Part shown: positions 12,091 to 30,402 of the stretch, in pieces
How the letters are laid out: every line of letters starts with the position of its first letter
Position numbering within the stretch: the first letter of the stretch is position 1
Virus record (IMG/VR): IMGVR_UViG_3300008110_000030
Coordinates: 62,001-126,000 of that record
Direction: 5' to 3' (one strand)
Length of the DNA: 64,000 nt
The notes under the pieces: generated by a model
Databases searched by the model: none
The model's input: only the letters and a program-made list of their open reading frames with translations
Told to the model about the DNA's origin: nothing
Position numbers and translations under genes: made by a program

Positions 12091-12630
12091 ATGGCAAAAT
12101 ATCTTTCAACAAAAACATACGGTAACGACCGCGGCTTATCATGCTGTTTTAGACAGTGGCGTAGTACACATAGTCACTGCTCATTACTGCACGGATATTC
12201 AATTGGTATTAAACTAGTTTTTGAATCTGAAACACTGGATACTCGAAATTGGGTCATGGACTTTGGCGGACTCAAAGCATTTAAAGAGTGGGCTGACCAC
12301 ATGTTTGATCATACTTTGGTAATTGCTGAAGATGATCCCCATCGTGCCATGTTTGAAAAGATGGCTAGTTTGGGCTTACAAGATAAAGGTGGAGTGTGTG
12401 ACGTCCGTATCGTAGAAGGTGTAGGATGTGAAAAATTCAGCGAATTAGCTTTTAAAACCATGCAAGAAATTTTGGAAACTTTCCAAAGAGGCGAAGGTTG
12501 GGAATTAAAAGACCAAACAGGCAAAACAGTAAAACTGTTTGGTGCTCGATACCCAGTTGGTTCTGATGTTAAATTACGGTCAGTAGAAGTTTTTGAACAT
12601 GCGGGCAATTCAGCAGTTTACGAAGGTTAA
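12091..12630 (+). CDS. queD: 6-pyruvoyl-tetrahydropterin synthase / QueD-like T-fold protein
   Basis: HCSLLHGY, NWVMDFGGLK, FDH, GCEKF, VEVFEH; AAGGA RBS. Confidence 0.75.
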   Translation: MAKYLSTKTYGNDRGLSCCFRQWRSTHSHCSLLHGYSIGIKLVFESETLDTRNWVMDFGGLKAFKEWADHMFDHTLVIAEDDPHRAMFEKMASLGLQDKGGVCDVRIVEGVGCEKFSELAFKTMQEILETFQRGEGWELKDQTGKTVKLFGARYPVGSDVKLRSVEVFEHAGNSAVYEG

Positions 12631-12784
12631 GAAACTTTGGCGTCTTTGGGCTAAGGCTTTGGGTGAAAAATCCGGCAGTTCGGATGAAGAAGCAGATAAA
12701 ATCGCTTGCATTCGGACTGCAATTGTGTTAACATATATTATAACAAACTTTTTTATTGTAGCAGGCGTTATAAGGCATTGGTAA
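12593..12784 (+). CDS. small membrane protein, start uncertain
   Basis: LWRLWAKALGEK...IVAGVIRHW with one TM segment; fills the gap and is TAATG-coupled to the next gene, but no clear ATG. Confidence 0.5.
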   Translation: MNMRAIQQFTKVKKLWRLWAKALGEKSGSSDEEADKIACIRTAIVLTYIITNFFIVAGVIRHW

Positions 12785-13191
12785 TGACTACTGGATTTAC
12801 ATGTTCAACATTTGATTTGTTTCACGCAGGTCACGTAATGATGCTCAAAGAAGCCAAAGAGCATTGTGATTATCTTCTTGTTGGGCTACAAACAGATCCA
12901 ACCATAGATAGACCACACAAAAACAAGCCTATCCAAACAGTATTTGAACGTTTTATACAATTAAAGGCTTGTAAGTATGTTGACGAAGTTGTAGTGTATG
13001 CTACTGAAAAAGAACTTCGAGACATATTGCTTTCTTATCCTATTAGTATTAGAATACTGGGAGAAGAATATGCTGGTAAAGAATTTACTGGCGATGATAT
13101 TGATATGGACTTTTATTTCAATCGACGAGAGCACAGTTTTTCAACAACCGAACTAAGACAGCGTGTAGTAGACGCAGAAAGTAAAAAATGA
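12784..13191 (+). CDS. cytidylyltransferase (TagD/HIGH family)
   Basis: TFDLFHAGH, KYVDEV, R..SFSTTELR; ATG at 12784. Confidence 0.85.
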   Translation: MTTGFTCSTFDLFHAGHVMMLKEAKEHCDYLLVGLQTDPTIDRPHKNKPIQTVFERFIQLKACKYVDEVVVYATEKELRDILLSYPISIRILGEEYAGKEFTGDDIDMDFYFNRREHSFSTTELRQRVVDAESKK

Positions 13192-14204
13192 TTAAGCGCA
13201 TAGGCTTTGCATGTAAGTGGATCGACACTCCTGATCAAGTAGATGGTATCAGGGCTACTGATGATTGTAAGCAATACAACACTGGTGCTACCACCATAAC
13301 TTGGTTAAATAAACAAACAAAAGAAGTTGCTGAACAAAAGCTATGGGATCTAATGGTCCAGAACTTAGAAGCGACTCGTTTGCTTGTTGAAAGGGTAGGT
13401 AAACAACATGAAAGACTCCGCATGGTTCGCCTTAGTAGCGACATTCTTCCTGCTTATACCCAGTCTGATTGGAGTTACTTTTGGAGCAAGCCTGACGTTG
13501 TCCAGTATCTTGAACGCAATTTTATCCTTATTGGGGATAGTGCTCGTGCAAGCAATACCCGTGTTTCTATGCATCCTGGTCAGTTTACTGTTCTTGCTAG
13601 TGATAATCCGGACATTGTTCGGCGAAGCATAGAGGAGTTTGAATATCATGCAGATATGGTCAGGTACATGGGCTACGGTAAACAATTTCAGGACTTTAAG
13701 ATCAACGTCCACATCTCGGGTAGAGCCGGTCCCGAAGGTATTCGAGCTGCCTACAAAAAACTTACCCCCGAAGCAAGAAATTGCATCACCATTGAAAATG
13801 AGGAAATGAGCCATGGTTTATCTACTTGCTTGTCTCTTGGTGACCTTCTTCCTATTGTACTTGATATCCATCATCATTGGATTAAAGAAGGTGAATACAT
13901 CATGCCTAATGACCCAAAAGTACAGCAAGTACTTGACAGTTGGCGTGGTCTTCGCCCTACTATGCACTATAGCGTTAGCAGGGAAGACGTGTTGGTTGGT
14001 CATTGCACACTGACTAAACCTGATCACAAGACTCTGTTAGAGTCTGGACATAAAAAACAAAAACTTAGAGCACACAGTAATTTTTATTGGAATAAAGAAG
14101 TTAATGATTGGGCTTTGACTTTTAATGACCAATTTGATATTATGTGCGAAAGCAAGGCTAAGAACCTAGCCAGCAAGGCATTGTTTGACTACAGCAATAC
14201 TTGA
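13188..14204 (+). CDS. uvsE: UV-damage endonuclease (UVDE)
   Basis: RIGFACK, RLSSD, SMHPGQF, ITIENEE, VLDIHHHW, MHYS, MCESKAK. Confidence 0.9.
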   Translation: MIKRIGFACKWIDTPDQVDGIRATDDCKQYNTGATTITWLNKQTKEVAEQKLWDLMVQNLEATRLLVERVGKQHERLRMVRLSSDILPAYTQSDWSYFWSKPDVVQYLERNFILIGDSARASNTRVSMHPGQFTVLASDNPDIVRRSIEEFEYHADMVRYMGYGKQFQDFKINVHISGRAGPEGIRAAYKKLTPEARNCITIENEEMSHGLSTCLSLGDLLPIVLDIHHHWIKEGEYIMPNDPKVQQVLDSWRGLRPTMHYSVSREDVLVGHCTLTKPDHKTLLESGHKKQKLRAHSNFYWNKEVNDWALTFNDQFDIMCESKAKNLASKALFDYSNT

Positions 14205-14222: not shown

Positions 14223-14248
14223 AAAAACCCGCACTAGGCGGGTTTTTT
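14223..14248. terminator. bidirectional intrinsic terminator
   Basis: AAAAACCCGC-ACTAG-GCGGGTTTTTT between convergent genes. Confidence 0.9.
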
Positions 14249-14274
14249 GTTGCCAAGAAGATTATAACTTATAG

Positions 14275-14565
14275 TTACGCAGTCTTCTTAGGCGCCCTAG
14301 GCTTAGTACCAACTTTCTTTACAGCTGGTGTCTTTGCTGGGGCTTTTGGTTTTGGAGCTGCCTTAGCTTTTGCAGGTGCCTTTGCAGGTGCCTTTGCAGG
14401 TGCCTTTTTAGTTGCTGGCTTTTTCTTAGCTGGTGCAATTGATTCAACAACTGCTTGACTAGCTTGCTCAACAACTGGTGTTGTCGCAGGTGCTTCCACT
14501 TTATATGGAACTTCTGCTGTTACCGGCTTCTCTGAACCAAATAATGATTTTAGAAATTTAATCAT
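14275..14565 (-). CDS. Lys/Ala/Pro-rich histone-H1-like small basic protein
   Basis: AAGGAG RBS on the minus strand; KKAPAKAPAKAPAK tail. Confidence 0.75.
   Translation of the reverse strand: MIKFLKSLFGSEKPVTAEVPYKVEAPATTPVVEQASQAVVESIAPAKKKPATKKAPAKAPAKAPAKAKAAPKPKAPAKTPAVKKVGTKPRAPKKTA
14369..14404. repeat. 12-bp tandem repeat, 3 copies (TTTGCAGGTGCC)
   Basis: Three exact copies; encodes (APAK)3 on the minus strand. Confidence 0.9.
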
Positions 14566-14637: not shown

Positions 14638-14666
14638 TTGACTTAAAGAGATATTGGTGCTACAAT
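14638..14666 (+). promoter_or_regulatory. sigma70-type promoter (extended -10) for the suf-like genes
   Basis: TTGACT (14638-14643), 17 bp, TACAAT (14661-14666) preceded by TGn; a TAAATA box also lies at 14610. Confidence 0.75.
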
Positions 14667-14709: not shown

Positions 14710-15435
14710 ATGTTAAAAATTACAAATCTCTCCGTCAATTACGACGTTATTCCAATTTTGGAAGATATCAATTTAGAAATCAATGAAGGCGAAATTCACG
14801 CCATTTTAGGACCAACAGGTTCAGGCAAAAGTTCCTTAGTCAGTGTTATTGCTGGCAAATCAGATCTTAGCGTTGTCAAAGGTAAAATAAACTTTAAGAG
14901 AAAATCTTTAAACAGTTTAGATCCAAATGAAAGAAGTAAATTAGGAATTTTTACAACATTTCAGGAGCCACCTGAAATTAATGGCATTACAAATTTAAAT
15001 TTAACTAGACAAATTTTGAATGCTCGAAATGATAAAAGATCATCAACTGACGTTATTAATGATTATAAAAATTTAATAAAACAATTTGATCTAGGAAGCG
15101 AATGGTCTAATCGAGATTACAACGTAGGAGCAAGCGCAGGCGAAAAAAAGAAAAATGAAATTGTACAGTTATACATGCTCAATCCATCTCTTACAATTTT
15201 AGACGATATTGACAGTGGCTTAGACTTAGACACACTAACTGAAGTATTTAAAAGTTTAAAATCTTTCCTCTCACAAAAAGGAAAGGCAGCTATCATTATC
15301 ACACATCAACCAACGATCCTTGAAGCAATAGAGCCCACACATGTGCATGTTATCATAGATGGAAGAATCGTGGAGTCAGGTGATAAGAAAATAATTAAAA
15401 GGATCATTTCAAATGGCTATCGAGAGTTTTCTTAA
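14710..15435 (+). CDS. sufC: SufC-like ABC ATPase with degenerate signature and Walker B
   Basis: EIHAILGPTGSGKSS, FQEPPEI, SAGEKKKNEIVQ, ILDDIDSGLD, IITH, VHVIIDGRIVESG. Confidence 0.85.
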   Translation: MLKITNLSVNYDVIPILEDINLEINEGEIHAILGPTGSGKSSLVSVIAGKSDLSVVKGKINFKRKSLNSLDPNERSKLGIFTTFQEPPEINGITNLNLTRQILNARNDKRSSTDVINDYKNLIKQFDLGSEWSNRDYNVGASAGEKKKNEIVQLYMLNPSLTILDDIDSGLDLDTLTEVFKSLKSFLSQKGKAAIIITHQPTILEAIEPTHVHVIIDGRIVESGDKKIIKRIISNGYREFS

Positions 15436-16237
15436 AGTTGATTCACAAGACCCAGATTGGTCAAACAGTCCTACACAGTACTTTGGTAAAAAATTTAAGG
15501 TCATTGATGCAAATTGCTTAATGATAAAAGAAAATACTGATGACTTGATGGTTCTACGTATGAATCCAACTGAATCAGATTTGTTATGCAAAAATTTACA
15601 AGTGCTTGGAAGAGACAGTAGTAGGCTAGACTTATTCATTCTATGCGATGGATCTAAAAATACTCAACAGGTTTTTATTTACAATGTAACTGCTGAACCA
15701 AATTCAATTATTAATATTGGGATTTTTGTTAAAGACGGGAAACTTAATAAGCATATATTTGAATGTGAGCTATACGAAAACTCTGTTATTAATATCTTTG
15801 GTCTAGCAGAAAATGGGGTTGGCGGTAGCAGTGAGATTATAAGCAAAGTTTATCACGCTGGTCCTTGTGCAGAGAGCAACACGTTTGTAAACAGTATTGC
15901 TGGAAAAAATAGTCGAACTGTCTTTCAGGGTATTGTTAAAATTGAAGAAGACATGATAGACAGCGTGTCCAGTGTAACTAATACCAGTATTGTCTGTGAC
16001 GAAACTTCACAAGCATTTAGTACTCCACAAATGGTTATTGACTGTGGACAAGTACGGGCGTATCATAGTTGTGAAGTTACTACAATTGACGAACATAGTC
16101 TATGGTATTTAGAAAGCAAGGGCATTGATAAAGTCAGTGCTGAGAACTTGTTAAAAACCCTGCATCAAGATAGTGTGTTGGAACTTATTGAATATCAAGA
16201 CATTAAAGATGAACTCAAAGATTTTTTCCAAAGTTAA
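15413..16237 (+). CDS. sufD: SufD/SufB-family beta-helix protein, most like SufD
   Basis: SRTVFQGIVKI, STPQMVID..V.AYHS, LWYLESKGI; lies between sufC and sufS. Confidence 0.75.
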   Translation: MAIESFLKVDSQDPDWSNSPTQYFGKKFKVIDANCLMIKENTDDLMVLRMNPTESDLLCKNLQVLGRDSSRLDLFILCDGSKNTQQVFIYNVTAEPNSIINIGIFVKDGKLNKHIFECELYENSVINIFGLAENGVGGSSEIISKVYHAGPCAESNTFVNSIAGKNSRTVFQGIVKIEEDMIDSVSSVTNTSIVCDETSQAFSTPQMVIDCGQVRAYHSCEVTTIDEHSLWYLESKGIDKVSAENLLKTLHQDSVLELIEYQDIKDELKDFFQS

Positions 16238-17357
16238 AAGCGATTTTACTTTACCAGACAAAACATACTTAAACAGTGCATCACAAACTATAATTCCTAA
16301 TCAGGTAAAGGATTCCTACCTTGATATTTGTAATAAAATTGATGCAAGGGATGAGTATGAGTTTATTAGACAAAAAGTAAAATTATTAATTAATTCTAAA
16401 AAAGACAACGAAATAATTTTTACTCAAGGAAACAATCATGGCATAAACATGATTGCCAAGAGCATTTGTCACAAATGGCATTCAAATGATTGTGTAATTG
16501 TTCCTGAAAGTGAACACCATGCTAATTTTCTCATTTGGCAATACATGTCCATTGAATATGGTTTTAGATTTGAAACCGTAAATGTTATCAAAGATGGCAG
16601 TATGGATCTTGGTCATCTTGAAGATTTACTCAATGGCTGTGATGGTAAGATATTGTTCAGTATGAGCCATATCTCTAACAGTATTGGTTATGTACAACCT
16701 GTTAAAAGTATATTTGATAAAGTCAAAGAATATGACGGGATAACTTTGCTAGATGCAAGTTTAAGCATTGGCAGAGAAACAATAGACGTGCAAGATTTCA
16801 ATATTGATTTTTTAACATTTACTGGACATAAATTTTATGGTCCAACGGGTGTTGGCATGTTATACGGGAAACAAAAGTATTTAGACAAGTTAGAACCTAC
16901 TATATTAGGTGATAGCAATAGTACACTACTCCCTTGGAAATTAGAAATTGGCAAACCCAACATTGCAGGGGTAGTAATGTTAGGTTCAGCAATTGACTGG
17001 TTCACTTCATATGATTTAGAAAGTTTTAAAGTTCATGACAAACTTATGAATGCAAACTTTCAAATGATGTTGAATGACCTTGACTTCATAGAAATATTCC
17101 ACCCAGGTTACTATAAAGGTGGCTTAATTGGCTTCAACGTACATGGCCACCATCCTGCTTATGTAGGAGAATTTTTACTTAACGAAGGAATTGTATTAAA
17201 ATATGGTCATTTAAATGCAAGACCAATTGTAGAAGAAAAATTCCCAAATGGAATACTTAGATTGAGTTGGGCTTGCTACAATACTAAAGATGATGTTGAA
17301 CATTTAAAACAGGGTCTTGTAAAATTCTACGATAAATACAATTCTAAAAGGACATAA
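16209..17357 (+). CDS. sufS: SufS-like class-V PLP enzyme lacking the catalytic Cys
   Basis: YLNSAS, EIIFT, SEHHAN, SHISN, FTGHKFYGPTGVG (PLP Lys present); KYGHLNA replaces RxGHHCA. Confidence 0.8.
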   Translation: MNSKIFSKVKSDFTLPDKTYLNSASQTIIPNQVKDSYLDICNKIDARDEYEFIRQKVKLLINSKKDNEIIFTQGNNHGINMIAKSICHKWHSNDCVIVPESEHHANFLIWQYMSIEYGFRFETVNVIKDGSMDLGHLEDLLNGCDGKILFSMSHISNSIGYVQPVKSIFDKVKEYDGITLLDASLSIGRETIDVQDFNIDFLTFTGHKFYGPTGVGMLYGKQKYLDKLEPTILGDSNSTLLPWKLEIGKPNIAGVVMLGSAIDWFTSYDLESFKVHDKLMNANFQMMLNDLDFIEIFHPGYYKGGLIGFNVHGHHPAYVGEFLLNEGIVLKYGHLNARPIVEEKFPNGILRLSWACYNTKDDVEHLKQGLVKFYDKYNSKRT

Positions 17358-17360
17358 AAT

Positions 17361-17747
17361 ATGGCATATTCAGACAAAGTAATCGATCATTACGAGAATC
17401 CTCGCAACGTTGGTAGCTTTGACAAGAACGATACCGATGTTGGCACTGGCATGGTTGGTGCACCTGCTTGCGGTGATGTAATGAAACTACAGATAAAGGT
17501 AGACAATGATACAGGTATTATTACAGATGCAAAATTTAAAACGTATGGCTGCGGATCGGCTATCGCGAGCTCGAGTCTCGTTACAGAATGGCTCAAAGGA
17601 AAAACTCTCGACGAAGCAGGAACAATCAAAAACTCCGAAATCGCCACAGAACTAGCATTACCCCCAGTAAAGATACACTGTAGTATTCTAGCAGAAGATG
17701 CTATTAAGGCGGCTGTAAATGATTACCGTAACCGACACAGCACGTAA
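17361..17747 (+). CDS. iscU: Fe-S scaffold IscU
   Basis: MAYSDKVIDHYENPRNVGS, APACGD, YGCGSAIASS, LPPVKIHCS; all three Cys present; TAAATA at 17333. Confidence 0.97.
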   Translation: MAYSDKVIDHYENPRNVGSFDKNDTDVGTGMVGAPACGDVMKLQIKVDNDTGIITDAKFKTYGCGSAIASSSLVTEWLKGKTLDEAGTIKNSEIATELALPPVKIHCSILAEDAIKAAVNDYRNRHST

Positions 17748-18045
17748 GAGAATTAAACAGAATTTAGAAAAACGCGGCAAAGGCGTGGGTATTCGCATAG
17801 GTGTAAAAACCACAGGCTGTAGTGGATTGGCCTATACTATCGAATATGTGGATGAATACACTGCTGAACCTGGAGTCACTAATTTTGGTCAACCAGAATT
17901 TATTGTGCTGGTCGATGCCAAGAGTTTGGCTTATCTAAATGGTTTAACAATGGATTGGGTTCGCAACGGACTTAATGAAGGATTTGATTTTATTAATCCC
18001 AATGAGCGTGACCGCTGTGGATGTGGTGAAAGTTTTAGAGTTTAA
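17719..18045 (+). CDS. iscA: A-type Fe-S carrier IscA
   Basis: TTGCSGLAY, F.NPN...CGCGESF. Confidence 0.95.
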   Translation: MITVTDTARKRIKQNLEKRGKGVGIRIGVKTTGCSGLAYTIEYVDEYTAEPGVTNFGQPEFIVLVDAKSLAYLNGLTMDWVRNGLNEGFDFINPNERDRCGCGESFRV

Positions 18046-18329
18046 ATCTTACCAATTGGCAATGTACTGCTAACTGGCATATCCCAAATTTTTCTTTTAG
18101 TAATGCCCATTCGTTGGGCAAATTTTTTGACGTCACATTCTCCGCAAACATGAAAATATTTGTTGCTGAGTCTTTTGGGGTCTATCTTAGCATGATCCCT
18201 TGTAAAATCCCTGTCACAATTGTCACATCGAAAAACATTAATTGTTTTTGTTCTAGTATAATGATGTTCTTTGCCTAATTTACTGCTTCGAACATAATTA
18301 GAAATTTCTTTAAAGGATCGTATGAACAT
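18042..18329 (-). CDS. small Zn-finger-like protein
   Basis: CDNC and HVCGEC; TAAATA 5 nt before the ATG on the minus strand. Confidence 0.65.
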   Translation of the reverse strand: MFIRSFKEISNYVRSSKLGKEHHYTRTKTINVFRCDNCDRDFTRDHAKIDPKRLSNKYFHVCGECDVKKFAQRMGITKRKIWDMPVSSTLPIGKI

Positions 18330-18370: not shown

Positions 18371-18410
18371 AAGTGGACAGTTGGTATATCACCCAAATTT
18401 GGAGTTAATA

Positions 18411-21400
18411 ATGGCAAGAAAAGACGTTAATATTGGTTTAACAGGTAACGATGGAACAGGTGACAGCATACGTGATGCGTTTTCCAAAGTTAATGCAAAT
18501 TTCCAAGAACTTTACGCTAGTCAAGGTCTAGAGGCCGGACTAACATTTGATAACTTAGTTGACGTTATCAAACCACTAAGACCTAACACAGTTTTAGGCT
18601 TAGACAGTTTAGGAAAAACGATTGTTAGTAGAGATTTAGAAGCGGCTATTGGTATCAGTATTGATACAGCTACTGATCCATCTAAAATAATCTTTAGTAT
18701 TGCTAACGTTCAAATTCGACAAGACCCAACTCCTACGCTGTCAAACGTATTAGACGGAAGTGGTTTTAAATTAAGTTTTATTGGTGATCCTGAAAATGAC
18801 CAAGATGCTGTTACTAGAAAATGGGTTTATCAGAATTTCTTAAACAGAGACAATATTGACAAGTTGGGCACCTTTGATCTTGCTGCCGGCAGTGTCATGC
18901 GTCAGAACTTCAAAATTAGTCCTACTCCAGATAACGGCAACGTTAATGCTGGTACAAAAATTATTAGCGTTGTTGGATCTGACGGTGTTACTCCAAAGAA
19001 TGATGTTTTCTTAAAATTCCAAGCAACGCACCCTGCTCATGCAACACGTAAAGAATATGTAGATACTAAACTTTCTTTACAGGGAACTAACACACTAGAT
19101 CCAGCAACTGGCTTTGTAAACAAGGGCATGGGCGTGATGACTGGTCCATTAATATTAAATGACCACCCTGGTGACTATGTTGGTATCAATCGTCTTCCAG
19201 ACGGAACACTATTTGTACAAGAAGATTACAGAGCAGTTACTAAAGGATATGTAGATTCTAAGTCATATTCTAGTAGTGGTAATTTGTATGTTAGTACAAA
19301 AGGTAATGATGATATTTGGGATTTTGACAACGATCGTCCAAATCCAATCTATGGTTATCCAGAAGAAGAAATTGGTCGCAGTTGGAGTAAAGCATTTAAA
19401 TCATTGAATGCCGCATGTCGCTATGCAACTCGAATTATAGACACTGTTGAATTACAAAATACACCATACCAAGTTACGCCACAACAAATTACTCGTTGGG
19501 CTCCGCCATTTACAACTCCAATTACAAGCCCAAGAACTCGTGTGCGTGTAAGTTTACAAAATCATGGATTTCAAGATGGAGATTACGTTTTAGTTAGTGG
19601 AGCTATCTTAGGATCACTGGACACAAGAAATTTAAATGGTATCCATAGAGTTAATGCTTTAGATGTTAATAACTTTGAATTAAATTTAAAATCATTAGTA
19701 ACATGGCCAAATCCAGAAGTTGCTCCTGGCGGAACTATTAGCATTTCATTAGCTAACAAAAAGGATGGTCCTTACAGTATAACTTCTAAAGTCGATTTTG
19801 GATTTAGAGGATTCTTTGTACCAAAACCTGAAATTACTATTATGGTTGAGTCAGGTGTATATTTTGAAGAAGCTCCAATTTTTGTCCCACCTAACTGTGC
19901 TATTAAGGGTGACGAATTTAGACGTACATTAGTTAAACCAAAACCAGGTCCAGTTGACCCTGTTAAATCTCAACAGCTCAAGTTTGTTCGAGGCGACCGA
20001 AGCCAAAGTGCTACCTTTTGGTATAACACTCACTACTACCACCAACTTGCTAGATCAGTTGGAACTACTAACGTAGTTGGTAGTACAAAATTAGAAATTA
20101 AAAATAGTCCTTATAGACCAAAGAGTGGTATGAGGTTTATTGTAGGAACCGTTGGTGGAATACCTAATGTCTACAGAGTTGGGCGTGAAGTTAATATTGT
20201 TTACAAAGACCCAAATCCAGATTTAAACATTGCTCCAGGAACATATATTATGGACATTGTTGACGACAACGGTGATCCAAAACCACTAGCAACTGGTATC
20301 CCAGATTCATCAACAATTGAATTCTTGTTAGACAACGAGCACTGCGATGCATTATTGGTTGCTGATGCATTCCAATTGCGTAACCTAACACTTATTGGAT
20401 TCAAAGGCTTTGCTATGTCTTTTGATCCAAATAGACAAATCAAAACACGTTCTCCATATGCACAAGTTGGCGCTGTATTTGCTGGGGAAGGCGGTGGTGG
20501 TCAATTGGTTGACGGTATGTCTGGTAACCAAGTTTGCTACGTTCAAGACACTAGCTATACAGATCCGTTCACTGGTACACAAGGTTCTAGTGGTCTCAAA
20601 ATGACTGTTACTGGTCTTGTGCGTACTCCTGAAACTCCAAACACATTTTTCTTAGCTAAGAAAAAGTATGTCATTATTGATTCAACAACTCCAGATGCTA
20701 ATGGAACTGCTACATTAACATTGAGTACTACTACTCCAATTGAACTTGATGATACTTATTTGCCAGCAGGATTTATTCCAAACGGTTCTCAGATTTTAAT
20801 TGAAACTGCTGGTAATAGATCTATGTTGTCTAATGACTTTACCATGATCAACGATTTAGGTTATGGTCTAGTTTGTGAAAACAACGGTGTTGCAGAAGCA
20901 GTTAGTCAATTTACATACTATTGCCGTGCCAGCTATTTGTCTAGATCAGGCGGTCAAATTCGTTCTGTAACAGGCTCAAGTTGTTATGGTATTGTTGGTT
21001 TACAATCTGAAGGTAGCGATCCTAACGAAGCTATTCAAATTGGTAGAGTTAAAACTGACATTGGTAACATCATGCAAGTGTATATTGATGATCCAGATGC
21101 AGATGGTAACCAAGGTGCTGTAAATTTAGTAATGGGCGGCTTGGCTAGCAAGCCTATAAGAAATGCCACATTCAAACTGACCAAACATGAAGTTATTATT
21201 AAAAATATTGCTAGAGCAAGATTGCCAGGTGGGACATTAACTAATGGTCCTCTAGTAGTAACTACATATTATCCTCACCCTTTCTCAACTGGAGAAAGTG
21301 TACAAATGACCAGTGTTCGAGGATTGCAATTGCCTGCAATTCCTCCAAGTACTACTCCTAGAACAACTGATGTTGACGGCAGAGTTTACACAATTACCTC

Positions 21401-24400
21401 TATCAGTGACCATACCTTTACGTTAGATGGTTCTGAGAGTACTAACTATATCAATGATTTAGGAACTTATAATTTTGCTGACTTGCCGGCTCGCGCTATA
21501 TCCAATTTAGTAATTGGGGCACAAGACGTTGTATTCTCAATTAAAGGTGATCCAAGCCCATCTAATATTACAGGTAGAGCAAGGTTTGATGGAATTCCTG
21601 GTGAAAACCAAGCTGGTCAAAACGTACTAAAACTTCAACGTCTACAACGTCCAGCTGTTGTTGGAATGAAAACAACTATACCTGGCGGTGTACTGACCTA
21701 CACTGTAACTGGTGTTACTGAAAAAACGGTCACATTCAAACCTTCTCCAAGACCAACTCCTACTGGTGATAATGATAATAAAATTGGCGCACAGACCATT
21801 TATATCTATACCACTACAGACATTACAACAGGTGCTATTAGTGGTACTACTCTTACTGCTACTAATCTAGATCAAAATAATGTTGGTCAATTGGTCACAG
21901 GCGACACTGTAGCTGCCAACACTTATATTATTGAAGTTACCAGTCCAACAACTGCAACAGTTTCAATTAGTCAAAGTGTTACTAATAGAACTTTAGAATT
22001 AAGTTGGGTGCCTAAGATAGGTTGGAGTTTCCAACATTTAGACACCAACATGGGTCTACAGTTAACTTATACAAGATATACAATTACTGATACCCCAGTT
22101 TATGATGCAGTGTCAAACAGATGGGCTGTGACATTAGATACTCCTCTAACAGTTAACATGCAAAATCAAGAGGCAACTGGTCAGACTACCATCGTTGATG
22201 GCATATGGGACGTTACTTTAAATTATGATTTAGAAGTGAGTATCGTTAATAGTGTGACTCCTGTGTCATTTACATTTGTTGATTCATATTGGGTTACAAG
22301 TATTGATCCATCGCTGACTAACCCAATACCTACAGTCACTGATGCATATAATAGGACTCGTGCTCGTAAAATAAACTTGTATCAACAAAAGACAATTAGT
22401 GTAAGTCAAATTTTAAACAGACCTGCTATTATTAACAGTTCCGCCTTAAGATTTTCAGCTTCAAATTATGATCCAAGTATATACCGTATTTTAGGTAAGA
22501 CATCTGATGGCGGCATTACTCAAGACAAATACGCTGTTACTACAACAATAAATCCATTAAGTGGTCTCAACACCAATGCTGTACAAAAAGTATCAGATAA
22601 CAAAATTTGGATACAATCTGAAGTTATTGATTATTTGGCCACAATTTATCCTAACTTCCAATATAACATCAACACATGCTTCCGTGACGTTGGGTACATT
22701 ATTGATGCCGTTCTTTATGACTTGACCTATGGTGGTAACGTAAGAAGTCGTGCCGCTGGTATTAGTTATTATCAGCAAGGTAATCCAAGTGCGGCTCTTG
22801 TATTGAGTCAGCAAAAAATAGAAACTATTGATGCAATTAATTTTGCCACCACTGCGGCAATTACTGCACTGAATCAATACAGTGGTGCAACTATACCACA
22901 ACTACAACTACCATATCGTGGAAGCAATTTAAATGGTGTTGCACAAATACAAGCAAATAAATTATTTGTACAAGATGAAGTTATTGCATTTTTAGCACAA
23001 ACATACCCATCTTTACAATTTAATCAAACTACTTGCCGTAGAGACGTTGGTTTAATTCTTGATGCTGTTGCCTATGACTTAGAATATGGTGGTAACGTAG
23101 CAACTAGAACGGCTGCTCTAGCATATTATGACGGTTCAACAAGTTCACAATATGTGTTGTCTAATCAAAAAACACAAACCATTGCTGCCGTTAATAGAGC
23201 ATCAACTGTTGTTCAACAGATTGTTTTAGAAACAACTGTGACTGCAACAGCTGGAAATACATCAACGCAAAACACTGCTGGAACTCCTGGAGTTGCTGGG
23301 GTCGACAACGTACGAGTTCAAGAATTAATGAACATTATAACCAATGTTCTACAGAACGGTACTTCAGTTGCTCCTGTTAGAAATTTAGGTATTAGAAGAA
23401 GTTACCAAGATCCTTTAAGTATAGATTACGTTGCACAAGATATTGACAGTGGCATTGTAGCTGAAGCTGGAGCGGCAACTGCTTTACAAGCCTTAATGGA
23501 TCAAATTGTAGCAATAATTCAATTTGGTGCTACTGGCCCTCATGTTATTGTTCAACCACAAGTGTTGGACACACTACAAGCAATTGACTTCCCACCAACT
23601 GCAACATCACTACAATATGGTGCAGTATTAACTGGTATAGGAATTCCTAGAGCAGGAGTAGGTGGCGTAACTGAAGATACATTTATTAGAACTGTAACGC
23701 AGTTGTTTGACGAAAATCAAAATACAATTGGCTATAGAGCTAGAATTAGTGCTCCAGTCACACAAGCGATTCCTGCTGGTACAGAGATTACTATTACTGG
23801 TCCAGGCAGTGACTTCTTATTTGACCTAAACACCCCACTAGACCTTAGACACTTAGCTGGAGATGTAATTGGTATTACTACTACATTCTCAACAGTACGT
23901 GCAACTGGACATGATTTCTTAAACGTTGGTGCAGGTGGTTATGATGATTCTAACTATCCTAACAACGTTTATGGTCAACCAGTTAATACACCATCTGATA
24001 GTGCAATTGCCACAGAAGTTGGAACAGGTCGTGTGTTCCACGTGTCCACTGATCAAAATGGTAACTTTAGAGTAGGTAGTTTCTTTAACGTTAACCAAGG
24101 CGACGGCTCTGTTAGTATTAGTGCTAAGATTGGTCTAAGTGCTGTTACAAGTTTAAGTTTCTTAACTGGTGCAACTGTTAACCAATTCTCAACTGATTCT
24201 AAATTAGACGACAACAGTGATAACATTGTTTCAACACAGAAAGCAATGAAGACCTACATCAATAACTTGATTGATGGTCGCTTTACAATTGATAACACTG
24301 ATACTCCACAACGAGGTCTATTAAGACTTGACGGTGAGAGCATTATGGTTGGCGATTTAGACATTGGTTTAAACAGTGTTGAACGTATAGTAAACAGTCC

Positions 24401-26942: not shown

Positions 26943-26979
26943 GATATCCTAAAATAAATAAGATAAACAGGAACGAAAA

Positions 26980-29900
26980 ATGAGCATTCAATACATAAAC
27001 ATTGGTTCTAACGCAAATGATGGTACTGGCGATGATTTACGCACTGCGTTTTTAAAAGTAAATGATAATTTTCAATTACTTGCAACTATAGGTGGAGAGA
27101 CTAACGTAGGCGCTAATTTAGGTGGTGGCAGTGGGCAGGTTTACGCTGGCAAAACTAATGAGACTCTTAACTTTAGAACAATTGCTGGTGATGTCAGTTC
27201 AGGTATAACTGTAAATCAATCTGGCAATGTTATTACAATCGCTAGTAATTTTAGTGTTCCTGCATCTATTACTACATTAATATCCGACGACAACAGTGGA
27301 CAATTTACTACTACCAGTCCTGGAGCAACGTTTAGATTCAATGGAACTGGCGGTGTGACTACCAGTTTGAATGCTAATATATTAACTATTGATGGTCAAT
27401 TTACTCTGGTACAAGATACACTACCTTTATTAGGTGGTAATTTAGATTTGAACGGAAGCAATGTTGTTGGTTTAGGTAACATTAGTATTATTGGTGATAT
27501 TACCTCTGATTACTTAACTGTTGGAAGAATAGTAACTCCTGGAGTATTTCCAGCATCTGCTACTGTTAATGGTTCATTAACCGTACGTGGATCTTCAAGT
27601 TTACAGGCAGTTACTGCAACTACTATTCTTACTAACAATATTATAACTGCTCCAGGATTTACAGCAACAAGTGGAGCTTTCACTGGTAACCTTACTGGTA
27701 ATAGTACTGGCACACATTACGGCAATGTGGCTTTGAAAGTTGTTGATCCATTAGATCCTAATTATCCTGAAATAGTCATAGTTGATTCTGACACACAAAC
27801 AATAACTGGTACGCATTTTGGTACATTCAGTGGGGGAATGACTGGGTCACTAATTACTGGTGGGCTAGCATTGGATGGTAATGCTATTACTGGTCAAGGT
27901 AGAATAGAAATAACAGGATCACTAATTCCTACTAGCACTATGCCGTTTAAAGTGATTGGTAGATTCCATGGTGGCGATCAAGCTGATGGAGTTGCACCTG
28001 TATTAAGCGATGGTCCCGTTGGCGCAACTTTTTCAATGGAGCAACAACCAAATGGGTTTTCTGAACCAATTCGTTTACAGTCGTACAGTAAAAATGGAAG
28101 TAATTCGTTACCGCTAGGTCCAGGTATTAGATTTGAATCAATTAATGAAATAGATGTAACAGATCCGTTAACATACGATCCTTTAAATCCACCAACACAG
28201 CCAGAATATGTACTACATGGACATATTGGTGTGCTATCTTATAGTGACGGTGTTGAGGGATCAAATCCTGAACATAGTTCATTTGTTGCTAGAGTTAGAC
28301 ATGGCGATGCTGTAGGTGAGATGCGAGATGTAATTATTGCACGTGGTAATGATAGAGTAAGTATTACTGGTATTGACATTGATATTGCTAAAATTGGTAC
28401 AAGAATTATAGAAATTAGTCCTGGGGTCACTGGCCCAAGACCTTATGATTTAATTATTACTAATGAATCTTCAGGAAACTATATCAACTTTTATGGTGAT
28501 TATGATCCTCTCTTAGCTGAAGGCGCCGCAACTGGTCCTGGTTTTACTGGTTATAGTTTTCCAAAGGTGATTGGTGCTCCTGGTGAGGTACTGACTGTTC
28601 AATTAGGAACCAACCTACTGACATGGGCCACCCCAGGTGGCGGTGGAGGTGGAGGTGGTACAACTTTATTAAATTTAACTGACGTTCCAGACAGCTACGC
28701 TACCCATGCTGGTAAACTTTTACGAGTAAAATCAACAAGTGATGGTATTGAATTTACAAACAGTTTTGATGCCACAGTAACTGGTAGTTTAATTGGTAAT
28801 GCTGACACTGCAACTGCATTAGAAACTGCTAGAACAATTAACGGGTTTACGTTTGACGGTACTCAAAATATTACTATTGATACTAGACAAATTGAAGAAT
28901 TAAAACAACTGGCATCAAATGCCAGTCTAGTAGGCAGCAGTGGTTCTGTAGTAACAACAACTACTATTACTATTGCAGAATCTAATCTAACCATTAATGC
29001 TGGTGAGCCCTCTACTAACCAAGGTGCTCGTAAATTCCGTGTAGGAATGATAGTTAAAGGAATAGATATCCTCAATGCTGTTATTACTAATATTGCCTTA
29101 ACTGGTGGTTCAACCCCTGTTCCTAATAACGACAGAACAGTAACTCTAACAATAACATTTGACAGCCAAGTAGTGAATGCACAAACTGGTCTTAGTATCA
29201 CTGGCGAAGTTACAAATCAATGGTTTAATGATACAAAAGTTCGTGAAACCATTAGTGTTAGTCCTGGCAGTGCTCTTTCATATAACGAAACATTAGGTTT
29301 ATTTACATTGTCAGATGCAGTGTCAAGTGTTAATGACACATTGGTAAGAAGAAATAGCACTGGTGAAGTATTTCTTAAAACTGCCTATGTTACTACACTA
29401 ACAAAGAATAGTGCTGATAGTGTAATAACTGTAACAAGCCCAGTTTCTACTAATTCTGAGATAAACTCAACAGCAAACATTACCACAACAGGAACTGTTG
29501 TTGCTGGATTTATAACCTTAAATGGAGTAGGAAATCAAACCATAGCATCTAGTGCTGGTACTAGCATTATTTTACAACCAGGAACAAGTGTTGATGTAAG
29601 TGGCAAAAAGATAACGAATCTTTCAATTGCGGCTCCAACCGCAGACAGTGATGCTTCAACTAAAAAATATGTTGACGATGAAATTACAGGTCTATTTAAT
29701 GAGACGTTTCAAGAATTACCAGTGTCTGGAGATACTGGTGGAACATTAAATGTACAACGTAGTGCAATTTTCACAGTCGCTGGTAGTTCAAATATTGCTA
29801 CGGCAACAACTGGTACTGGTGTTCAGATCAATTTAAAAAGTACAATTTCTGGAATTAGCATTAGTGGAAACTTACCAGTTACAGGAAACGTAACAAGTTC

Positions 29901-30399
29901 GGGTGGATTTATAAAAGGTGGTAATGTTAAGATAGACGGAAATGCTGTTACACAAACTGTAAATGGTAGTGATTTAAATCTAGTTCCTGGAGATTTAGGT
30001 GGGTCAGTTGTAGTAAGTGGGAGCGATTTAAAACTAGTTAATAGTAGACTATTCCTTAACGGTTCTGATACAATGGAGTTTCCTCCTAATACATTAGAAC
30101 AAGATATTACGTTAGTAACAGCAACAACTTTTATTAGAACTGCTAACTGGGTTGACGATTCAGCAGGACTAGCTTATGCATCTTTGGCTAATGGTAGTCC
30201 AGGACAGATAAAAACAATTATTATGGCTAGCCGTGGTACATACGGTAATGCCTTAGATACAAGACCTAGATACTTGTTATTAAGTGGTAACATTAATGGA
30301 TCCACTAGAACAGTAAACATTGCCGCTTCTGATCCTAACGGTTCAACAACGTTCTTGTTCTTGAACAACAGTTGGTGGCGAATTGCTCATGTGGCGTAA
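26980..30399 (+). CDS. baseplate/tail-fiber protein
   Basis: Same NIGSNANDGTGDDLRTAF N-terminus, LETARTING and DASTKKYVD fiber motifs; TAAATA at 26955. Confidence 0.8.
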   Translation: MSIQYINIGSNANDGTGDDLRTAFLKVNDNFQLLATIGGETNVGANLGGGSGQVYAGKTNETLNFRTIAGDVSSGITVNQSGNVITIASNFSVPASITTLISDDNSGQFTTTSPGATFRFNGTGGVTTSLNANILTIDGQFTLVQDTLPLLGGNLDLNGSNVVGLGNISIIGDITSDYLTVGRIVTPGVFPASATVNGSLTVRGSSSLQAVTATTILTNNIITAPGFTATSGAFTGNLTGNSTGTHYGNVALKVVDPLDPNYPEIVIVDSDTQTITGTHFGTFSGGMTGSLITGGLALDGNAITGQGRIEITGSLIPTSTMPFKVIGRFHGGDQADGVAPVLSDGPVGATFSMEQQPNGFSEPIRLQSYSKNGSNSLPLGPGIRFESINEIDVTDPLTYDPLNPPTQPEYVLHGHIGVLSYSDGVEGSNPEHSSFVARVRHGDAVGEMRDVIIARGNDRVSITGIDIDIAKIGTRIIEISPGVTGPRPYDLIITNESSGNYINFYGDYDPLLAEGAATGPGFTGYSFPKVIGAPGEVLTVQLGTNLLTWATPGGGGGGGGTTLLNLTDVPDSYATHAGKLLRVKSTSDGIEFTNSFDATVTGSLIGNADTATALETARTINGFTFDGTQNITIDTRQIEELKQLASNASLVGSSGSVVTTTTITIAESNLTINAGEPSTNQGARKFRVGMIVKGIDILNAVITNIALTGGSTPVPNNDRTVTLTITFDSQVVNAQTGLSITGEVTNQWFNDTKVRETISVSPGSALSYNETLGLFTLSDAVSSVNDTLVRRNSTGEVFLKTAYVTTLTKNSADSVITVTSPVSTNSEINSTANITTTGTVVAGFITLNGVGNQTIASSAGTSIILQPGTSVDVSGKKITNLSIAAPTADSDASTKKYVDDEITGLFNETFQELPVSGDTGGTLNVQRSAIFTVAGSSNIATATTGTGVQINLKSTISGISISGNLPVTGNVTSSGGFIKGGNVKIDGNAVTQTVNGSDLNLVPGDLGGSVVVSGSDLKLVNSRLFLNGSDTMEFPPNTLEQDITLVTATTFIRTANWVDDSAGLAYASLANGSPGQIKTIIMASRGTYGNALDTRPRYLLLSGNINGSTRTVNIAASDPNGSTTFLFLNNSWWRIAHVA

Positions 30400-30402
30400 A
30401 CT

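What the first reader, a model, noticed from the sequence alone, without database searches (positions are those of the whole stretch)
16209..17357. Intact SufS homolog with Asn at the catalytic persulfide Cys position
Seen: the ORF has no frameshift or stop and keeps the PLP-lysine motif (TGHKFYGPTGVG) and EHHAN. The group-II desulfurase motif RxGHHCA reads KYGHLNA. The AAT codon at 17214-17216 is two substitutions from a Cys codon, so a single base-call error is unlikely. By eye, DGAQ reads DASL, EAGT reads EIGK, and the GGG beta-hairpin segment looks shortened. Known: this Cys forms the persulfide that SufS donates to Fe-S assembly, while Cys-less relatives such as C-DES and Cys mutants can retain cystine or selenocysteine lyase activity. 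Inference: either a pseudo-enzyme or decoy that binds host SufS/SufE, or a repurposed PLP lyase. A Cys in LSWACYN might substitute.
Basis: partly seen in the sequence, partly recalled or inferred. Interest (0 to 1): 0.78.

Follow-up and report, generated by a model that had tools for sequence, protein, structure and literature searches.

The report
Catalytically dead SufS in a phage
A freshwater giant phage carries an intact, strongly conserved copy of the sulfur-mobilising enzyme SufS that has lost its catalytic cysteine and every part needed to hand sulfur on, so it is kept for some job other than cysteine desulfuration.

Summary
The ORF at 16209-17357 (382 aa) is an intact type II SufS fold (AF2 pLDDT 93.6, TM 0.92 to E. 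coli and B. subtilis SufS). Asn336 (AAT, 17214-17216) sits where the persulfide Cys should be. It also lacks the R56 loop (13 aa) and the beta-hairpin (10 aa), and has R359->K, TT->NN, Q->L and T->K.

This is not a one-off. At least 15 metagenomic relatives (40-93% identity) form one clade nested inside Cys-bearing phage SufS, and all carry N, D or S at that site. dN/dS is 0.05-0.09, the same as for neighbouring genes.

Cys-bearing relatives have a full sufBCDSE-sufT-sufA operon. Every Cys-less locus has only sufC-sufD-sufS*, usually followed by an iscU-iscA cassette of betaproteobacterial type. In these loci SufC also loses its catalytic Glu, signature motif and H-loop, and SufD often loses the essential His.

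The window's subclade keeps a fully conserved, remodelled PLP pocket (Lys208, His103/104, Asp182, Arg351). Sister subclades have lost even the Lys.

Best reading: a pseudo-desulfurase retained for a non-desulfurase role in a remodelled phage Fe-S module. It probably still binds PLP, and a Cys-independent lyase activity remains possible. I found no report of this in the papers searched.

The parts
14638..14666 (+). Sigma-70-like promoter candidate (TTGACT, 17 nt, TACAAT, with TG before the second hexamer), 44 nt upstream of sufC
   Evidence: It matches 10 of 12 positions and lies in the only intergenic gap of the cluster. Promoter-like sites in the region as a whole are no more frequent than in shuffles, so this is a candidate only. 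The T4 late motif TATAAATA does not occur in the window.
14710..15435 (+). SufC-like ABC ATPase with a degenerate catalytic site (Glu after Walker B -> Asp; signature SGGE -> SAGE). Walker A, Q-loop and H-loop are kept.
   Evidence: TIGR01978 scores 253 bits, over the cut-off. Aligned to E. coli SufC. Comparison with live and dead phage loci in A2. dN/dS against L005 is 0.058.
15413..16237 (+). Short SufD (274 aa). The His equivalent to E. coli SufD H360 is kept here (RAYHSC). The gene overlaps sufC by 23 nt and sufS* by 29 nt.
   Evidence: PF01458 scores 94.9 bits and TIGR01981 99.8 bits. PDB alignment to SufD. A3. dN/dS 0.048.
16209..17357 (+). SufS* : Cys-less type II cysteine-desulfurase homologue (382 aa), the finding itself
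   Evidence: PF00266 scores 258 bits. TIGR01979 scores 267 bits, below the 475 cut-off. AF2 pLDDT is 93.6. Foldseek TM is 0.92 to SufS structures. dN/dS 0.049.
16356..16367 (+). Site of the 13-residue deletion that removes the alpha3-alpha4 loop (NIHRGIH; E. coli H55/R56)
   Evidence: Alignments A1 and A5. Table. The role of R56 is taken from PMC11507941 and PMC11408855.
16512..16526 (+). EHHAN (residues 102-106; His103/His104 correspond to E. coli H123/H124), retained
16830..16832 (+). Codon of Lys208, the PLP Schiff-base lysine (E. coli K226), retained
   Evidence: The codon is AAA here and AAG in relatives, which shows site-level purifying selection.
16908..16922 (+). Site of the 10-residue deletion of the type II beta-hairpin (beta-latch); the sequence reads GDSNS
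   Evidence: The role of the hairpin is taken from PMC8918507 and PMC11408855.
17214..17216 (+). AAT codon of Asn336 at the position of the persulfide-forming Cys (E. coli C364, B. subtilis C361)
   Evidence: Independent contigs confirm the codon.
17361..17747 (+). IscU scaffold. All cluster ligands (Cys37, Asp39, Cys64, His106, Cys107) and the LPPVK motif are intact.
   Evidence: TIGR01999 scores 224.8 bits, over the cut-off. A4. It is 82-88% identical to IscU of Comamonadaceae and other Burkholderiales.
17719..18045 (+). IscA-type A-type carrier. It overlaps iscU by 29 nt.
   Evidence: PF01521 and TIGR02011. It is only 30% identical to the SufA of the Cys-bearing relative L007.

Best explanation
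SufS* is a pseudo-desulfurase: a folded SufS-type protein that can no longer make or pass on a persulfide. Selection keeps it for a non-desulfurase role inside a remodelled phage Fe-S assembly module.

Shown:
- It lacks the nucleophilic Cys, the R56 loop, the beta-hairpin and R359, which are all the parts used for C-S cleavage and persulfide transfer to SufE.
- Its ancestors had a complete sufBCDSE-sufT-sufA operon.
- Its lineage lost sufB, sufE and sufT, and received an iscU-iscA cassette of betaproteobacterial type.
- In the same lineage SufC loses its catalytic residues and SufD often loses its essential His.
- All three genes stay intact, translationally overlapped, and under purifying selection as strong as that on neighbouring genes.

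Inferred:
- Sulfur for the phage IscU comes from the host's own IscS.
- SufC*-SufD-SufS* act together as a binding, scaffolding or regulatory unit in Fe-S supply for the phage's Fe-S enzymes. The genome has several radical-SAM candidates.
- In the window's own subclade the protein still binds PLP, and probably an amino acid, because the remodelled pocket is invariant. It may serve as a structural cofactor or ligand sensor rather than for turnover.
For: Fold and active site:
- The Cys site is Asn in the PDB alignment. The fold is intact.
- The residue table shows every Cys-less member also lacks the 13-aa loop, and all but P0025 lack the hairpin.
- Seven members have lost the PLP Lys too (HK -> NT, QN, NN, SN, AN). 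P0251 has also lost Asp200 and Arg379 and 48 N-terminal residues, yet its ORF is intact in the same module.

Phylogeny and selection:
- The 15 Cys-less proteins form one clade (SH-aLRT 99) nested among Cys-bearing phage SufS.
- dN/dS for window against L005 is 0.049 (109 synonymous and 36 non-synonymous differences), against SufC 0.058, SufD 0.048 and UvdE 0.046.
- dN/dS is 0.049 for P0007/P0008 and 0.086 for the Lys-less pair P0032/P0033.

Context:
- The live loci L007 and L008 carry SufB-SufC-SufD-SufS-SufE-SufT-SufA.
- Twelve different Cys-less proteins looked up, on 17 loci, all sit after SufC-SufD with no SufB or SufE.
- The 214-kb and 245-kb records hold no SufB, no SufE and no second class-V aminotransferase.

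Co-degeneration and surroundings:
- SufC and SufD degenerate in the same loci. The essential roles of SufD H360 and SufC ATPase are from PMC5571166.
- IscU looks fully functional and is 82-88% identical to betaproteobacterial IscU.
- The genome has six radical-SAM hits, one over the Pfam cut-off.
- A SOD gene is inserted in the module in two lineages.
Against: - No partner has been shown. The one complex prediction (SufD + IscU + SufS*) returned 'no answer'.
- In the window's subclade all PLP and substrate contacts are invariant: H103, H104, N157, D182, T205, H207, K208 and R351. So are the new residues N76, L185, K249, K331 and N336. The background is 48% invariant columns. This is what a working but re-tooled PLP enzyme would look like.
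- In P0006-8 the same pocket is kept although SufC and SufD are more decayed, SufC is even split in L023, and IscU is absent. That loosens the link between SufS* and SufCD.
- No expression data exist: no RNA run was listed as holding the gene.
- The host is inferred only from IscU similarity.
Confidence: 0.55

Rival explanations
1. It is a re-tooled PLP enzyme. In the Lys-bearing subclade that includes the window, SufS* still binds PLP and catalyses a reaction that needs no active-site Cys. Candidates are selenocysteine lyase, cysteine sulfinate desulfinase, or a C-DES-like beta-elimination on cystine or a bulkier thiol. Deleting the R56 loop and the hairpin would open the active-site entrance.
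For: - Lys208, His103/104, Asn157, Asp182, Thr205, His207 and Arg351 are invariant in all eight members. The replacements N76, L185, K249, K331 and N336 are fixed rather than drifting, and the background is 48% invariant columns.
- The Lys, His and Asn codons vary synonymously.
- The same positions drift freely in the sister subclades, so their constancy here is not a simple structural requirement.
- From memory, not tested here: E. coli SufS/CsdB C364A keeps selenocysteine lyase and cysteine sulfinate desulfinase activity, and Synechocystis C-DES is a Cys-less NifS-like cystine lyase.
Against: - Sister lineages with the same gene order and similar purifying selection (dN/dS 0.086) have lost the Lys and most of the pocket. 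The role shared by the clade therefore cannot be PLP catalysis.
- The phosphate-binding TT, Gln203 and Thr278 are all replaced.
- R359K and R56 variants of E. coli SufS are already impaired (PMC11507941).
- The best structural matches are SufS, and C-DES is not among the top 50.
Confidence: 0.28
2. It is a decoy or dominant-negative. SufS*, perhaps with SufC* and SufD, binds host SufS, SufE or SufB, or another desulfurase partner such as those of the Dnd or Ssp DNA-phosphorothioation defence systems. This would shut down or divert a host pathway.
For: - Loss of catalytic residues with a retained fold and purifying selection is the usual signature of a dominant-negative pseudoenzyme.
- A Glu->Asp change after Walker B and a degenerate signature motif in SufC would favour ATP binding without hydrolysis. 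That rests on general ABC-protein knowledge from memory, applied.
- The protein shows generic similarity to SspA and DndA.
Against: - The parts of SufS that make the close-approach complex with SufE, the R56 loop and the beta-latch, are deleted (PMC11408855).
- In the window the alpha16 Asp needed for SufE binding is Tyr (the D346R effect is from PMC11408855).
- In the bacterial family with the closest IscU, SufB/D was found in 5 of 81 genomes and SufS in 17 of 81, so most candidate hosts have nothing to decoy.
- The SspA and DndA hits are weaker than the SufS hits and reflect only the shared fold.
Confidence: 0.1
3. It is a decaying remnant: a dead gene left over after the operon was broken up, not yet removed.
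For: Catalytic residues are lost stepwise across SufS, SufC and SufD. SufC is split in one contig, L023. A further N-terminal truncation is seen in P0251.
Against: - All 17 ORFs aligned or looked up are intact despite divergence down to 36-40% identity.
- dN/dS is 0.05-0.09, equal to that of the neighbouring functional genes.
- 77 positions are invariant across the clade.
- The 29-nt sufD/sufS overlap is conserved.
Confidence: 0.03
4. It is still a cysteine desulfurase that uses another Cys, for example Cys356 in LSWACYN, or a Cys supplied in trans by IscU.
For: Lys208, His103 and Arg351 are kept, and an IscU with reactive Cys residues is encoded 3 nt downstream.
Against: - The catalytic loop K331-P339 has no Cys.
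- Cys356 is also present in the Cys-bearing relatives and is H, L, I or V in other Cys-less members.
- IscU is absent from the loci of P0007, P0008 and P0025.
- The complex prediction gave no support.
Confidence: 0.04

Closest known systems
Type II cysteine desulfurase SufS/CsdB (E. coli, B. subtilis; TIGR01979)
   Same: It has the same fold (TM 0.92) at 28-30% identity. It keeps the PLP Lys, the His-His of EHHAN, the Asp to the pyridine N, the Asn to O3' and the carboxylate Arg. It sits in a suf gene cluster after sufC-sufD.
   Different: There is no catalytic Cys (Asn336), no R56 loop and no beta-hairpin. R359 is Lys, and TT, Q and T of the PLP site are replaced. It scores 267 bits against a 475-bit cut-off. 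There is no SufE or SufU partner and no SufB.
Laboratory variants SufS C364A (E. coli, PDB 6O11) and C361A (B. subtilis, 7E6A)
   Same: The nucleophile is missing while PLP chemistry up to the Cys-aldimine is retained. B. subtilis C361A is in fact the best sequence match in PDB.
   Different: Those are single point mutants. Here the loss is natural, fixed in a clade, accompanied by two deletions and five further active-site replacements, and maintained by selection.
Cys-bearing SufS of related giant phages (P0011-P0031; loci L007, L008)
   Same: They are 51-59% identical, with the same N-terminus, the same GFL-x-AQP loop context and the same position after sufC-sufD downstream of uvdE.
   Different: They keep the Cys, the loop, the hairpin and all PLP residues. 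They sit in a complete sufBCDSE-sufT-sufA operon with a catalytically intact SufC.
C-DES, the Cys-less NifS-like cystine C-S lyase of Synechocystis (from memory)
   Same: It is a class-V aminotransferase-fold protein without the desulfurase Cys that may still use PLP.
   Different: C-DES is not a derived SufS and has an intact PLP site. It is not among the top 50 structural matches, and no activity is known for SufS*.
Degenerate nucleotide-binding sites of ABC proteins (for the neighbour SufC; from memory)
   Same: The catalytic Glu after Walker B is replaced by Asp and the signature motif is altered, while Walker A is kept.
   Different: In known cases one of two sites in a heterodimer is degenerate. 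Here the only SufC is affected, so both sites of a SufC dimer would be degenerate.

Membership tests
SufS family cysteine desulfurase (type II; TIGR01979) | Class-V aminotransferase fold of the SufS type | tested here: met
   PF00266 scores 258 bits. AF2 pLDDT is 93.6. TM is 0.92 to E. coli and B. subtilis SufS.
SufS family cysteine desulfurase (type II; TIGR01979) | PLP-binding Lys (E. coli K226) with His/Asp/Asn/Arg contacts | tested here: met
   K208, H103/H104, D182, N157 and R351 are present. However TT->NN, Q203->L and T278->K. PLP binding itself was not measured.
SufS family cysteine desulfurase (type II; TIGR01979) | Persulfide-forming Cys in the short catalytic loop (RxGHHCA) | tested here: not met
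   Asn336 (AAT, 17214-17216) aligns with the Cys. The loop contains no Cys.
SufS family cysteine desulfurase (type II; TIGR01979) | Type II beta-hairpin (beta-latch) and alpha3-alpha4 loop with R56 | tested here: not met
   There are 10-residue and 13-residue deletions at these sites.
SufS family cysteine desulfurase (type II; TIGR01979) | Score over the curated family cut-off | tested here: not met
   267.3 bits against the cut-off of 475.1.
SufS family cysteine desulfurase (type II; TIGR01979) | Dedicated sulfur acceptor SufE or SufU | tested here: not met
   No SufE in G000, G001 or G004, though those records are only 61%, 70% and 17% complete. The neighbour is IscU-type (TIGR01999 at 224.8 bits, over the cut-off; SufU model 67 bits, below it).
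SufBC2D scaffold system | SufB together with SufC and SufD, an active SufC ATPase, and SufD His360 | tested here: not met
   The 214-kb record has only one SUFBD_core gene, the short SufD. In SufC the Glu is Asp and the signature reads SAGE. The SufD His is present here but lost in most sister loci.
Pseudoenzyme (catalytically inactive homologue kept by selection) | Essential catalytic residue lost in a whole clade, with an intact ORF and purifying selection | tested here: met
   A clade of 15. dN/dS is 0.049-0.086. Lack of activity is inferred from the residues and was not assayed.
C-DES-like Cys-independent C-S lyase | PLP-dependent beta-elimination without an enzyme Cys | not testable with these tools
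   The pocket is conserved in the Lys-bearing subclade but lost in its sisters. An enzyme assay is needed.

The most novel reading that the evidence does not exclude
A whole sub-complex of the SUF machinery (SufC, SufD, SufS) has been converted, in one lineage of freshwater giant phages, into a set of catalytically inert but strongly conserved proteins. They would work together in a new, non-enzymatic way, for example as a cysteine- or PLP-sensing regulator or adaptor that steers the host ISC pathway and the phage IscU-IscA towards phage Fe-S enzymes. This conversion followed a switch from SUF-type to ISC-type Fe-S assembly.
Probability: 0.3. Interest if true: 0.8.

Novelty: new variant of a known kind. 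Interest (0 to 1): 0.62.

Why it matters
Fe-S assembly genes are known as auxiliary genes in viromes (for example PMC8940887) and are read as simple boosts to host capacity. This locus shows that a gene annotated 'cysteine desulfurase / selenocysteine lyase' can be enzymatically dead and still be kept by selection. The same holds for its partners SufC and SufD.

The degeneration series is natural and graded: Cys->Ser, then Asn, then Asp; then loss of the PLP Lys; then loss of the Asp and Arg and the N-terminus. It offers material for asking what SufS, SufC and SufD do besides catalysis.

It also warns against counting such genes as sulfur-mobilising capacity in viral metabolic surveys. And it documents a phage lineage that replaced a SUF operon with a host-type IscU-IscA cassette.

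Tried and rejected
- Complex prediction of SufD + IscU + SufS* with my own alignments scored 0.00. The tool's verdict was 'no answer', so it counts neither for nor against binding.
- No close DNA relative exists in the INPHARED phage collection. Protein hits there are ordinary bacterial-type SufS at 22-32% identity.
- RNA evidence: no metatranscriptome was listed as holding the gene.
- The T4 late promoter motif TATAAATA is absent from the window, so there is no sign of late or structural expression. The sigma-70-like site at 14638 is only a candidate, because such sites are not enriched in the region.
- The 50%-representative search found no further distant Cys-less lineages beyond this viral clade. 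After three representatives the scores drop from 324 to 212 bits into ordinary SufS.
- Sequencing or assembly error is rejected.
- A substitute Cys at 356 is rejected.
- A neutral pseudogene is rejected.
- Model coordinates are not exposed to scripts, so I could not measure distances in the AF2 model or map clade conservation onto surfaces.
- The paper searches found no report of a Cys-less SufS pseudoenzyme or of suf operons in giant phages.
Full report
**1. The observation**

The ORF at 16209-17357 on the + strand encodes 382 residues without a stop. Pfam places it in Aminotran_5 at 258 bits. NCBIfam's best model is SufS (TIGR01979), but at 267 bits against a curated cut-off of 475.

Phmmer against all PDB chains gives B. 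subtilis and E. coli SufS as the best matches (E about 1e-52). It aligns the window's GHLNARP with GHHCAQP, so Asn336 occupies the place of the persulfide-forming Cys. The codon at 17214-17216 is AAT.

- EHHAN is at 102-106.
- TGHKFYGPTGVG is at 205-216, with Lys208.
- DGAQ reads DASL and EAGT reads EIGK.
- Ten residues of the type II beta-hairpin are missing.

A 13-residue deletion removes the NIHRGIH loop (E. coli H55/R56). The phosphate-binding Thr-Thr is Asn-Asn. R359 is Lys. The N-terminal 45 residues fall outside the Pfam match.

An AlphaFold2 model built on alignment A1 is confident (mean pLDDT 93.6, pTM 0.92). It superposes on E. coli and B. subtilis SufS with TM 0.92.

**2. It is real sequence**

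Three IMG/VR contigs from different samples encode a protein identical to it, and two more encode one at 93%. Lake and freshwater metagenomes from more than ten studies hold near-identical DNA. Logan contigs from two of those studies cover the Asn codon with no differences (X1 record 5, X4 record 22). Relatives spell the Asn as AAT or AAC, with synonymous changes in the flanking codons.

**3. Where it lies**

The window is bases 62001-126000 of a 214,617-bp IMG/VR virus record that CheckV rates 61% complete. It is T4-like, with an rIIA gene, ClpP, PhoH and a clamp-loader-like gene, and fibre genes of 2853, 1139 and 1413 aa.

The gene sits in a tight + strand cluster:
- SufC, 14710-15435
- a short SufD, 15413-16237
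- SufS*, 16209-17357
- IscU, 17361-17747
- IscA, 17719-18045

The overlaps are 23, 29 and 29 nt, with one 3-nt gap. A sigma-70-like site (TTGACT, 17 nt, TACAAT, with TG) lies 44 nt before sufC. The T4 late motif is absent from the window.

The record has no SufB, no SufE and no second class-V aminotransferase. It does have six radical-SAM hits, one over the Pfam cut-off, and an HSP70 gene.

**4. Relatives**

A search of 5.8 billion proteins found 34 close relatives at 40-93% identity, and then a drop to ordinary SufS at about 35%. Aligned in A1 and tabulated, they split cleanly into two groups.

Seventeen proteins of 401-414 aa keep every catalytic feature: TT, EHHAN, N, D, Q, HK, T, R, Cys, the R56 loop and the hairpin.

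Sixteen proteins of 368-389 aa lack the Cys (N, D, or S in P0025) and the R56 loop. Fifteen of these also lack the hairpin.

- The eight of the window's subclade keep H103, H104, N157, D182, H207, K208 and R351.
- P0009, P0010, P0027, P0029 and P0032-34 have also lost the PLP Lys (HK -> NT, QN, NN, SN, AN) and much of the pocket.
- P0251 (334 aa) has further lost the Asp, the Arg and 48 N-terminal residues.

A maximum-likelihood tree was built with the two deletion regions left out. It places 15 Cys-less proteins in one clade (SH-aLRT 99) nested among the Cys-bearing phage proteins. P0025 (Cys->Ser, codon TCT, hairpin kept) sits on a separate long branch, so the tree needs two changes of state. 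The codons form a possible path TGC -> (AGT/TCT Ser) -> AAT/AAC Asn -> GAT/GAC Asp.

**5. Selection**

Nei-Gojobori estimates:

| Pair | Gene | dN/dS |
|---|---|---|
| window vs L005 | SufS* | 0.049 (109 synonymous, 36 non-synonymous differences) |
| window vs L005 | SufC | 0.058 |
| window vs L005 | SufD | 0.048 |
| window vs L005 | UvdE | 0.046 |
| P0007 vs P0008 | SufS* | 0.049 |
| P0032 vs P0033 (Lys-less) | SufS* | 0.086 |

Seventy-seven positions are invariant across the whole Cys-less clade. The gene is therefore as constrained as its neighbours, and the 'neutral copy' refutation fails.

**6. Context tells the history**

The Cys-bearing relatives L007 and L008 carry, downstream of uvdE, SufB (474 aa), SufC, SufD, SufS, SufE, SufT (DUF59) and SufA.

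The Cys-less loci are the window, L002-L006, L016/17, L018, L019, L020/21, L022, L023, L024/25, L026, L108/109, L110/111 and L112. In the same syntenic place (ClpP, PTPS, UvdE upstream; a 95-aa Zn-ribbon gene and the giant fibre downstream) they all have only SufC-SufD-SufS*.

- IscU-IscA follow in most loci. They are absent next to P0007, P0008 and P0025.
- The window's IscA is only 30% identical to L007's SufA.
- IscU is 86-89% identical among these phages, where SufS* is 40-65%.
- IscU is 82-88% identical to IscU of Comamonadaceae and other Burkholderiales.
- The same iscU-iscA pair occurs in a different place in another 330-kb phage that shows no sufC-sufD-sufS nearby.
- Between the window and L005 the cassette is far more diverged (dN 0.13 and 0.25) than SufS* (0.04).

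So iscU-iscA is a mobile cassette that replaced the SufE-SufT-SufA tail. Two lineages also have an Fe/Mn superoxide dismutase gene inserted in or beside the module.

**7. The partners degenerate too**

Compared with E. coli SufC and the live phage SufC, the SufC of Cys-less loci shows three kinds of loss:
- The catalytic Glu after Walker B is lost: Asp in the window, L005, L016, L021 and L108, and S, H, C or Q elsewhere. L024 keeps Glu.
- The SGGE signature is lost: SAGE in the window, and TILE, SILE, DIVE, SIGE, SVGE, SNIE or STGE elsewhere.
- The H-loop His is lost in most loci, but kept in the window, L005 and L108.

In L023 SufC is split, with about 55 residues missing.

The SufD His equivalent to E. 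coli H360 is essential there (PMC5571166). It is kept in the window, L005 and L021, and is Q, N or I in the others.

The window's phage is thus the least degenerate member of a lineage in which all three remaining SUF proteins shed catalytic residues while staying under selection.

**8. What the lost and kept parts mean**

- The conserved Lys, Arg, His and Cys, and the type II hairpin, define SufS (PMC8918507).
- R56 on the alpha3-alpha4 loop and R359 are needed mainly for the transpersulfuration step (PMC11507941).
- The R56 loop, the beta-latch and helix alpha16 shape the close-approach complex with SufE (PMC11408855).

SufS* has lost the nucleophile, R56 with its loop, the latch and R359. 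That is the whole persulfide half of the enzyme. In the window, the alpha16 Asp needed for SufE binding is Tyr.

What remains in the window's subclade is the PLP and amino-acid-binding half. It is not merely present but invariant. Thirteen of the fifteen former active-site positions other than the Cys site, including the new N76, L185, T205, K249 and K331, and the new Asn336 itself, show no change in eight sequences. The background is 48% invariant columns. The same positions vary freely in the Lys-less sisters.

I read this as continued PLP binding in this subclade. Whether that serves turnover or only stability or sensing cannot be told from sequence.

**9. Host and the decoy idea**

The phage is from lakes. 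Its IscU points to freshwater betaproteobacteria of the Limnohabitans, Rhodoferax and Polaromonas kind.

In a sample of 81 genomes of that bacterial family, SufB/D was found in 5 and a SufS over the cut-off in 17. Of the five genomes with the closest IscU, one has SufB/D.

If the host belongs there, it mostly has ISC only, and a decoy for host SufS or SufE has no target. Together with the deleted SufE-docking parts, this lowers the decoy reading. The host assignment is an inference from one gene.

**10. Mechanism**

Most likely (0.55): SufS* is a non-desulfurase subunit or binding protein of a remodelled phage Fe-S module. Host IscS supplies sulfur to the phage IscU-IscA. SufC*-SufD-SufS* persist for a scaffolding, regulatory or sensing role. 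The window's copy probably still binds PLP.

- Shown: the loss of catalytic parts, the clade, the selection, the operon history and the co-degeneration.
- Inferred: the source of sulfur, the joint action of the trio and the nature of its role.

The one complex prediction allowed gave no answer.

Rivals:
- a Cys-independent PLP lyase in the Lys-bearing subclade (0.28);
- a decoy or dominant-negative (0.10);
- a desulfurase using another Cys (0.04);
- a neutral remnant (0.03).

**11. Comparison with what is known**

It works like, and descends from, type II SufS. It fails four defining features that were tested here (Cys, hairpin, R56 loop, family cut-off) and lacks SufE/SufU and SufB. I therefore file it as a derived, inactive variant and not as a SufS.

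It resembles the laboratory C364A and C361A variants and, more loosely, C-DES. PHROGs has a family for it with no function assigned (phrog_12787).

The paper searches found Fe-S genes reported as viral auxiliary genes, but no Cys-less SufS pseudoenzyme and no phage suf operon of this kind.

**12. Verdict**

Interest 0.62.

Noticed in passing
window 14710-15435 (and L016, L018, L019, L021, L022, L024, L026, L108): In every SufB-less locus the SufC ATPase has a degenerate active site. The Glu after Walker B is D, S, H, C or Q, the signature SGGE is altered, and the H-loop His is often lost. Yet dN/dS is 0.058-0.080.
   Followed up: yes
window 17361-18045; L005 6153-6846; L027 8001-8685: The iscU-iscA pair behaves as a mobile cassette. 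Between the window and L005 it is far more diverged (dN 0.13 and 0.25, dS saturated) than the adjacent sufS* (dN 0.04). It also occurs in a different context (after RNR and glutaredoxin) in another 330-kb phage contig. IscU recruits 50-200 times more metagenomic contig depth than its flanks.
   Followed up: partly
L110 7014-7571; L112 728-1324: An Fe/Mn superoxide dismutase gene is inserted inside or just before the SufC-SufD-SufS* module in two related phage lineages. L110 also has an extra A-type carrier gene.
   Followed up: no
L023 1485-2076: In the contig carrying P0007 the sufC gene is split into 61-aa and 139-aa pieces, with about 55 residues (including the Q-loop) missing. sufD and sufS* are intact. 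This could be a real loss or an assembly error in a 4.7-kb contig.
   Followed up: partly
window 18042-18329 (-): A 95-aa protein with two CxxC pairs (Zn-ribbon-like) has no Pfam or PHROG match. A minus-strand gene of the same size (91-95 aa), not compared by sequence, lies immediately downstream of the module in most related loci (a 75-aa one in L020), convergent with it.
   Followed up: no
window 14275-14565 (-): A 96-aa Lys/Ala/Pro-rich protein with repeated PAKA units (histone H1-like composition) is encoded between uvdE and sufC. Minus-strand genes of similar size (96-118 aa), not compared by sequence, occupy the same place in related loci. A GC-rich hairpin with T-runs on both sides at about 14224-14250 looks like a bidirectional terminator (seen by eye, not listed by the scan).
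   Followed up: no
window 12091-14204: A QueD/PTPS-like gene (12091-12630), a cytidylyltransferase-like gene (12781-13191) and a UV-damage endonuclease UvdE (13188-14204) precede the module. The PTPS...UvdE...Suf order is conserved in L018, L019 and L110.
   Followed up: partly
G000:C1:39571-41364 and C1:7273-20994 (outside the window): The phage record encodes a full-length HSP70 (865 bits) and six radical-SAM domain hits, one over the Pfam cut-off. IscU keeps the LPPVK motif that HscA-type HSP70s bind. Whether the phage HSP70 is HscA-like was not examined.
   Followed up: no
window 18381-34644: Three very large consecutive + strand ORFs (2853, 1139 and 1413 aa) have weak tail-fibre or virion-protein PHROG hits. 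In related loci the first gene after the module carries a weak T4 gp9/10 N-terminal domain hit.
   Followed up: no
window 1-64000: GC skew is positive over almost the whole window (cumulative skew rises steadily to 3.56). Almost all long ORFs are on the + strand. No tRNA genes were found.
   Followed up: no
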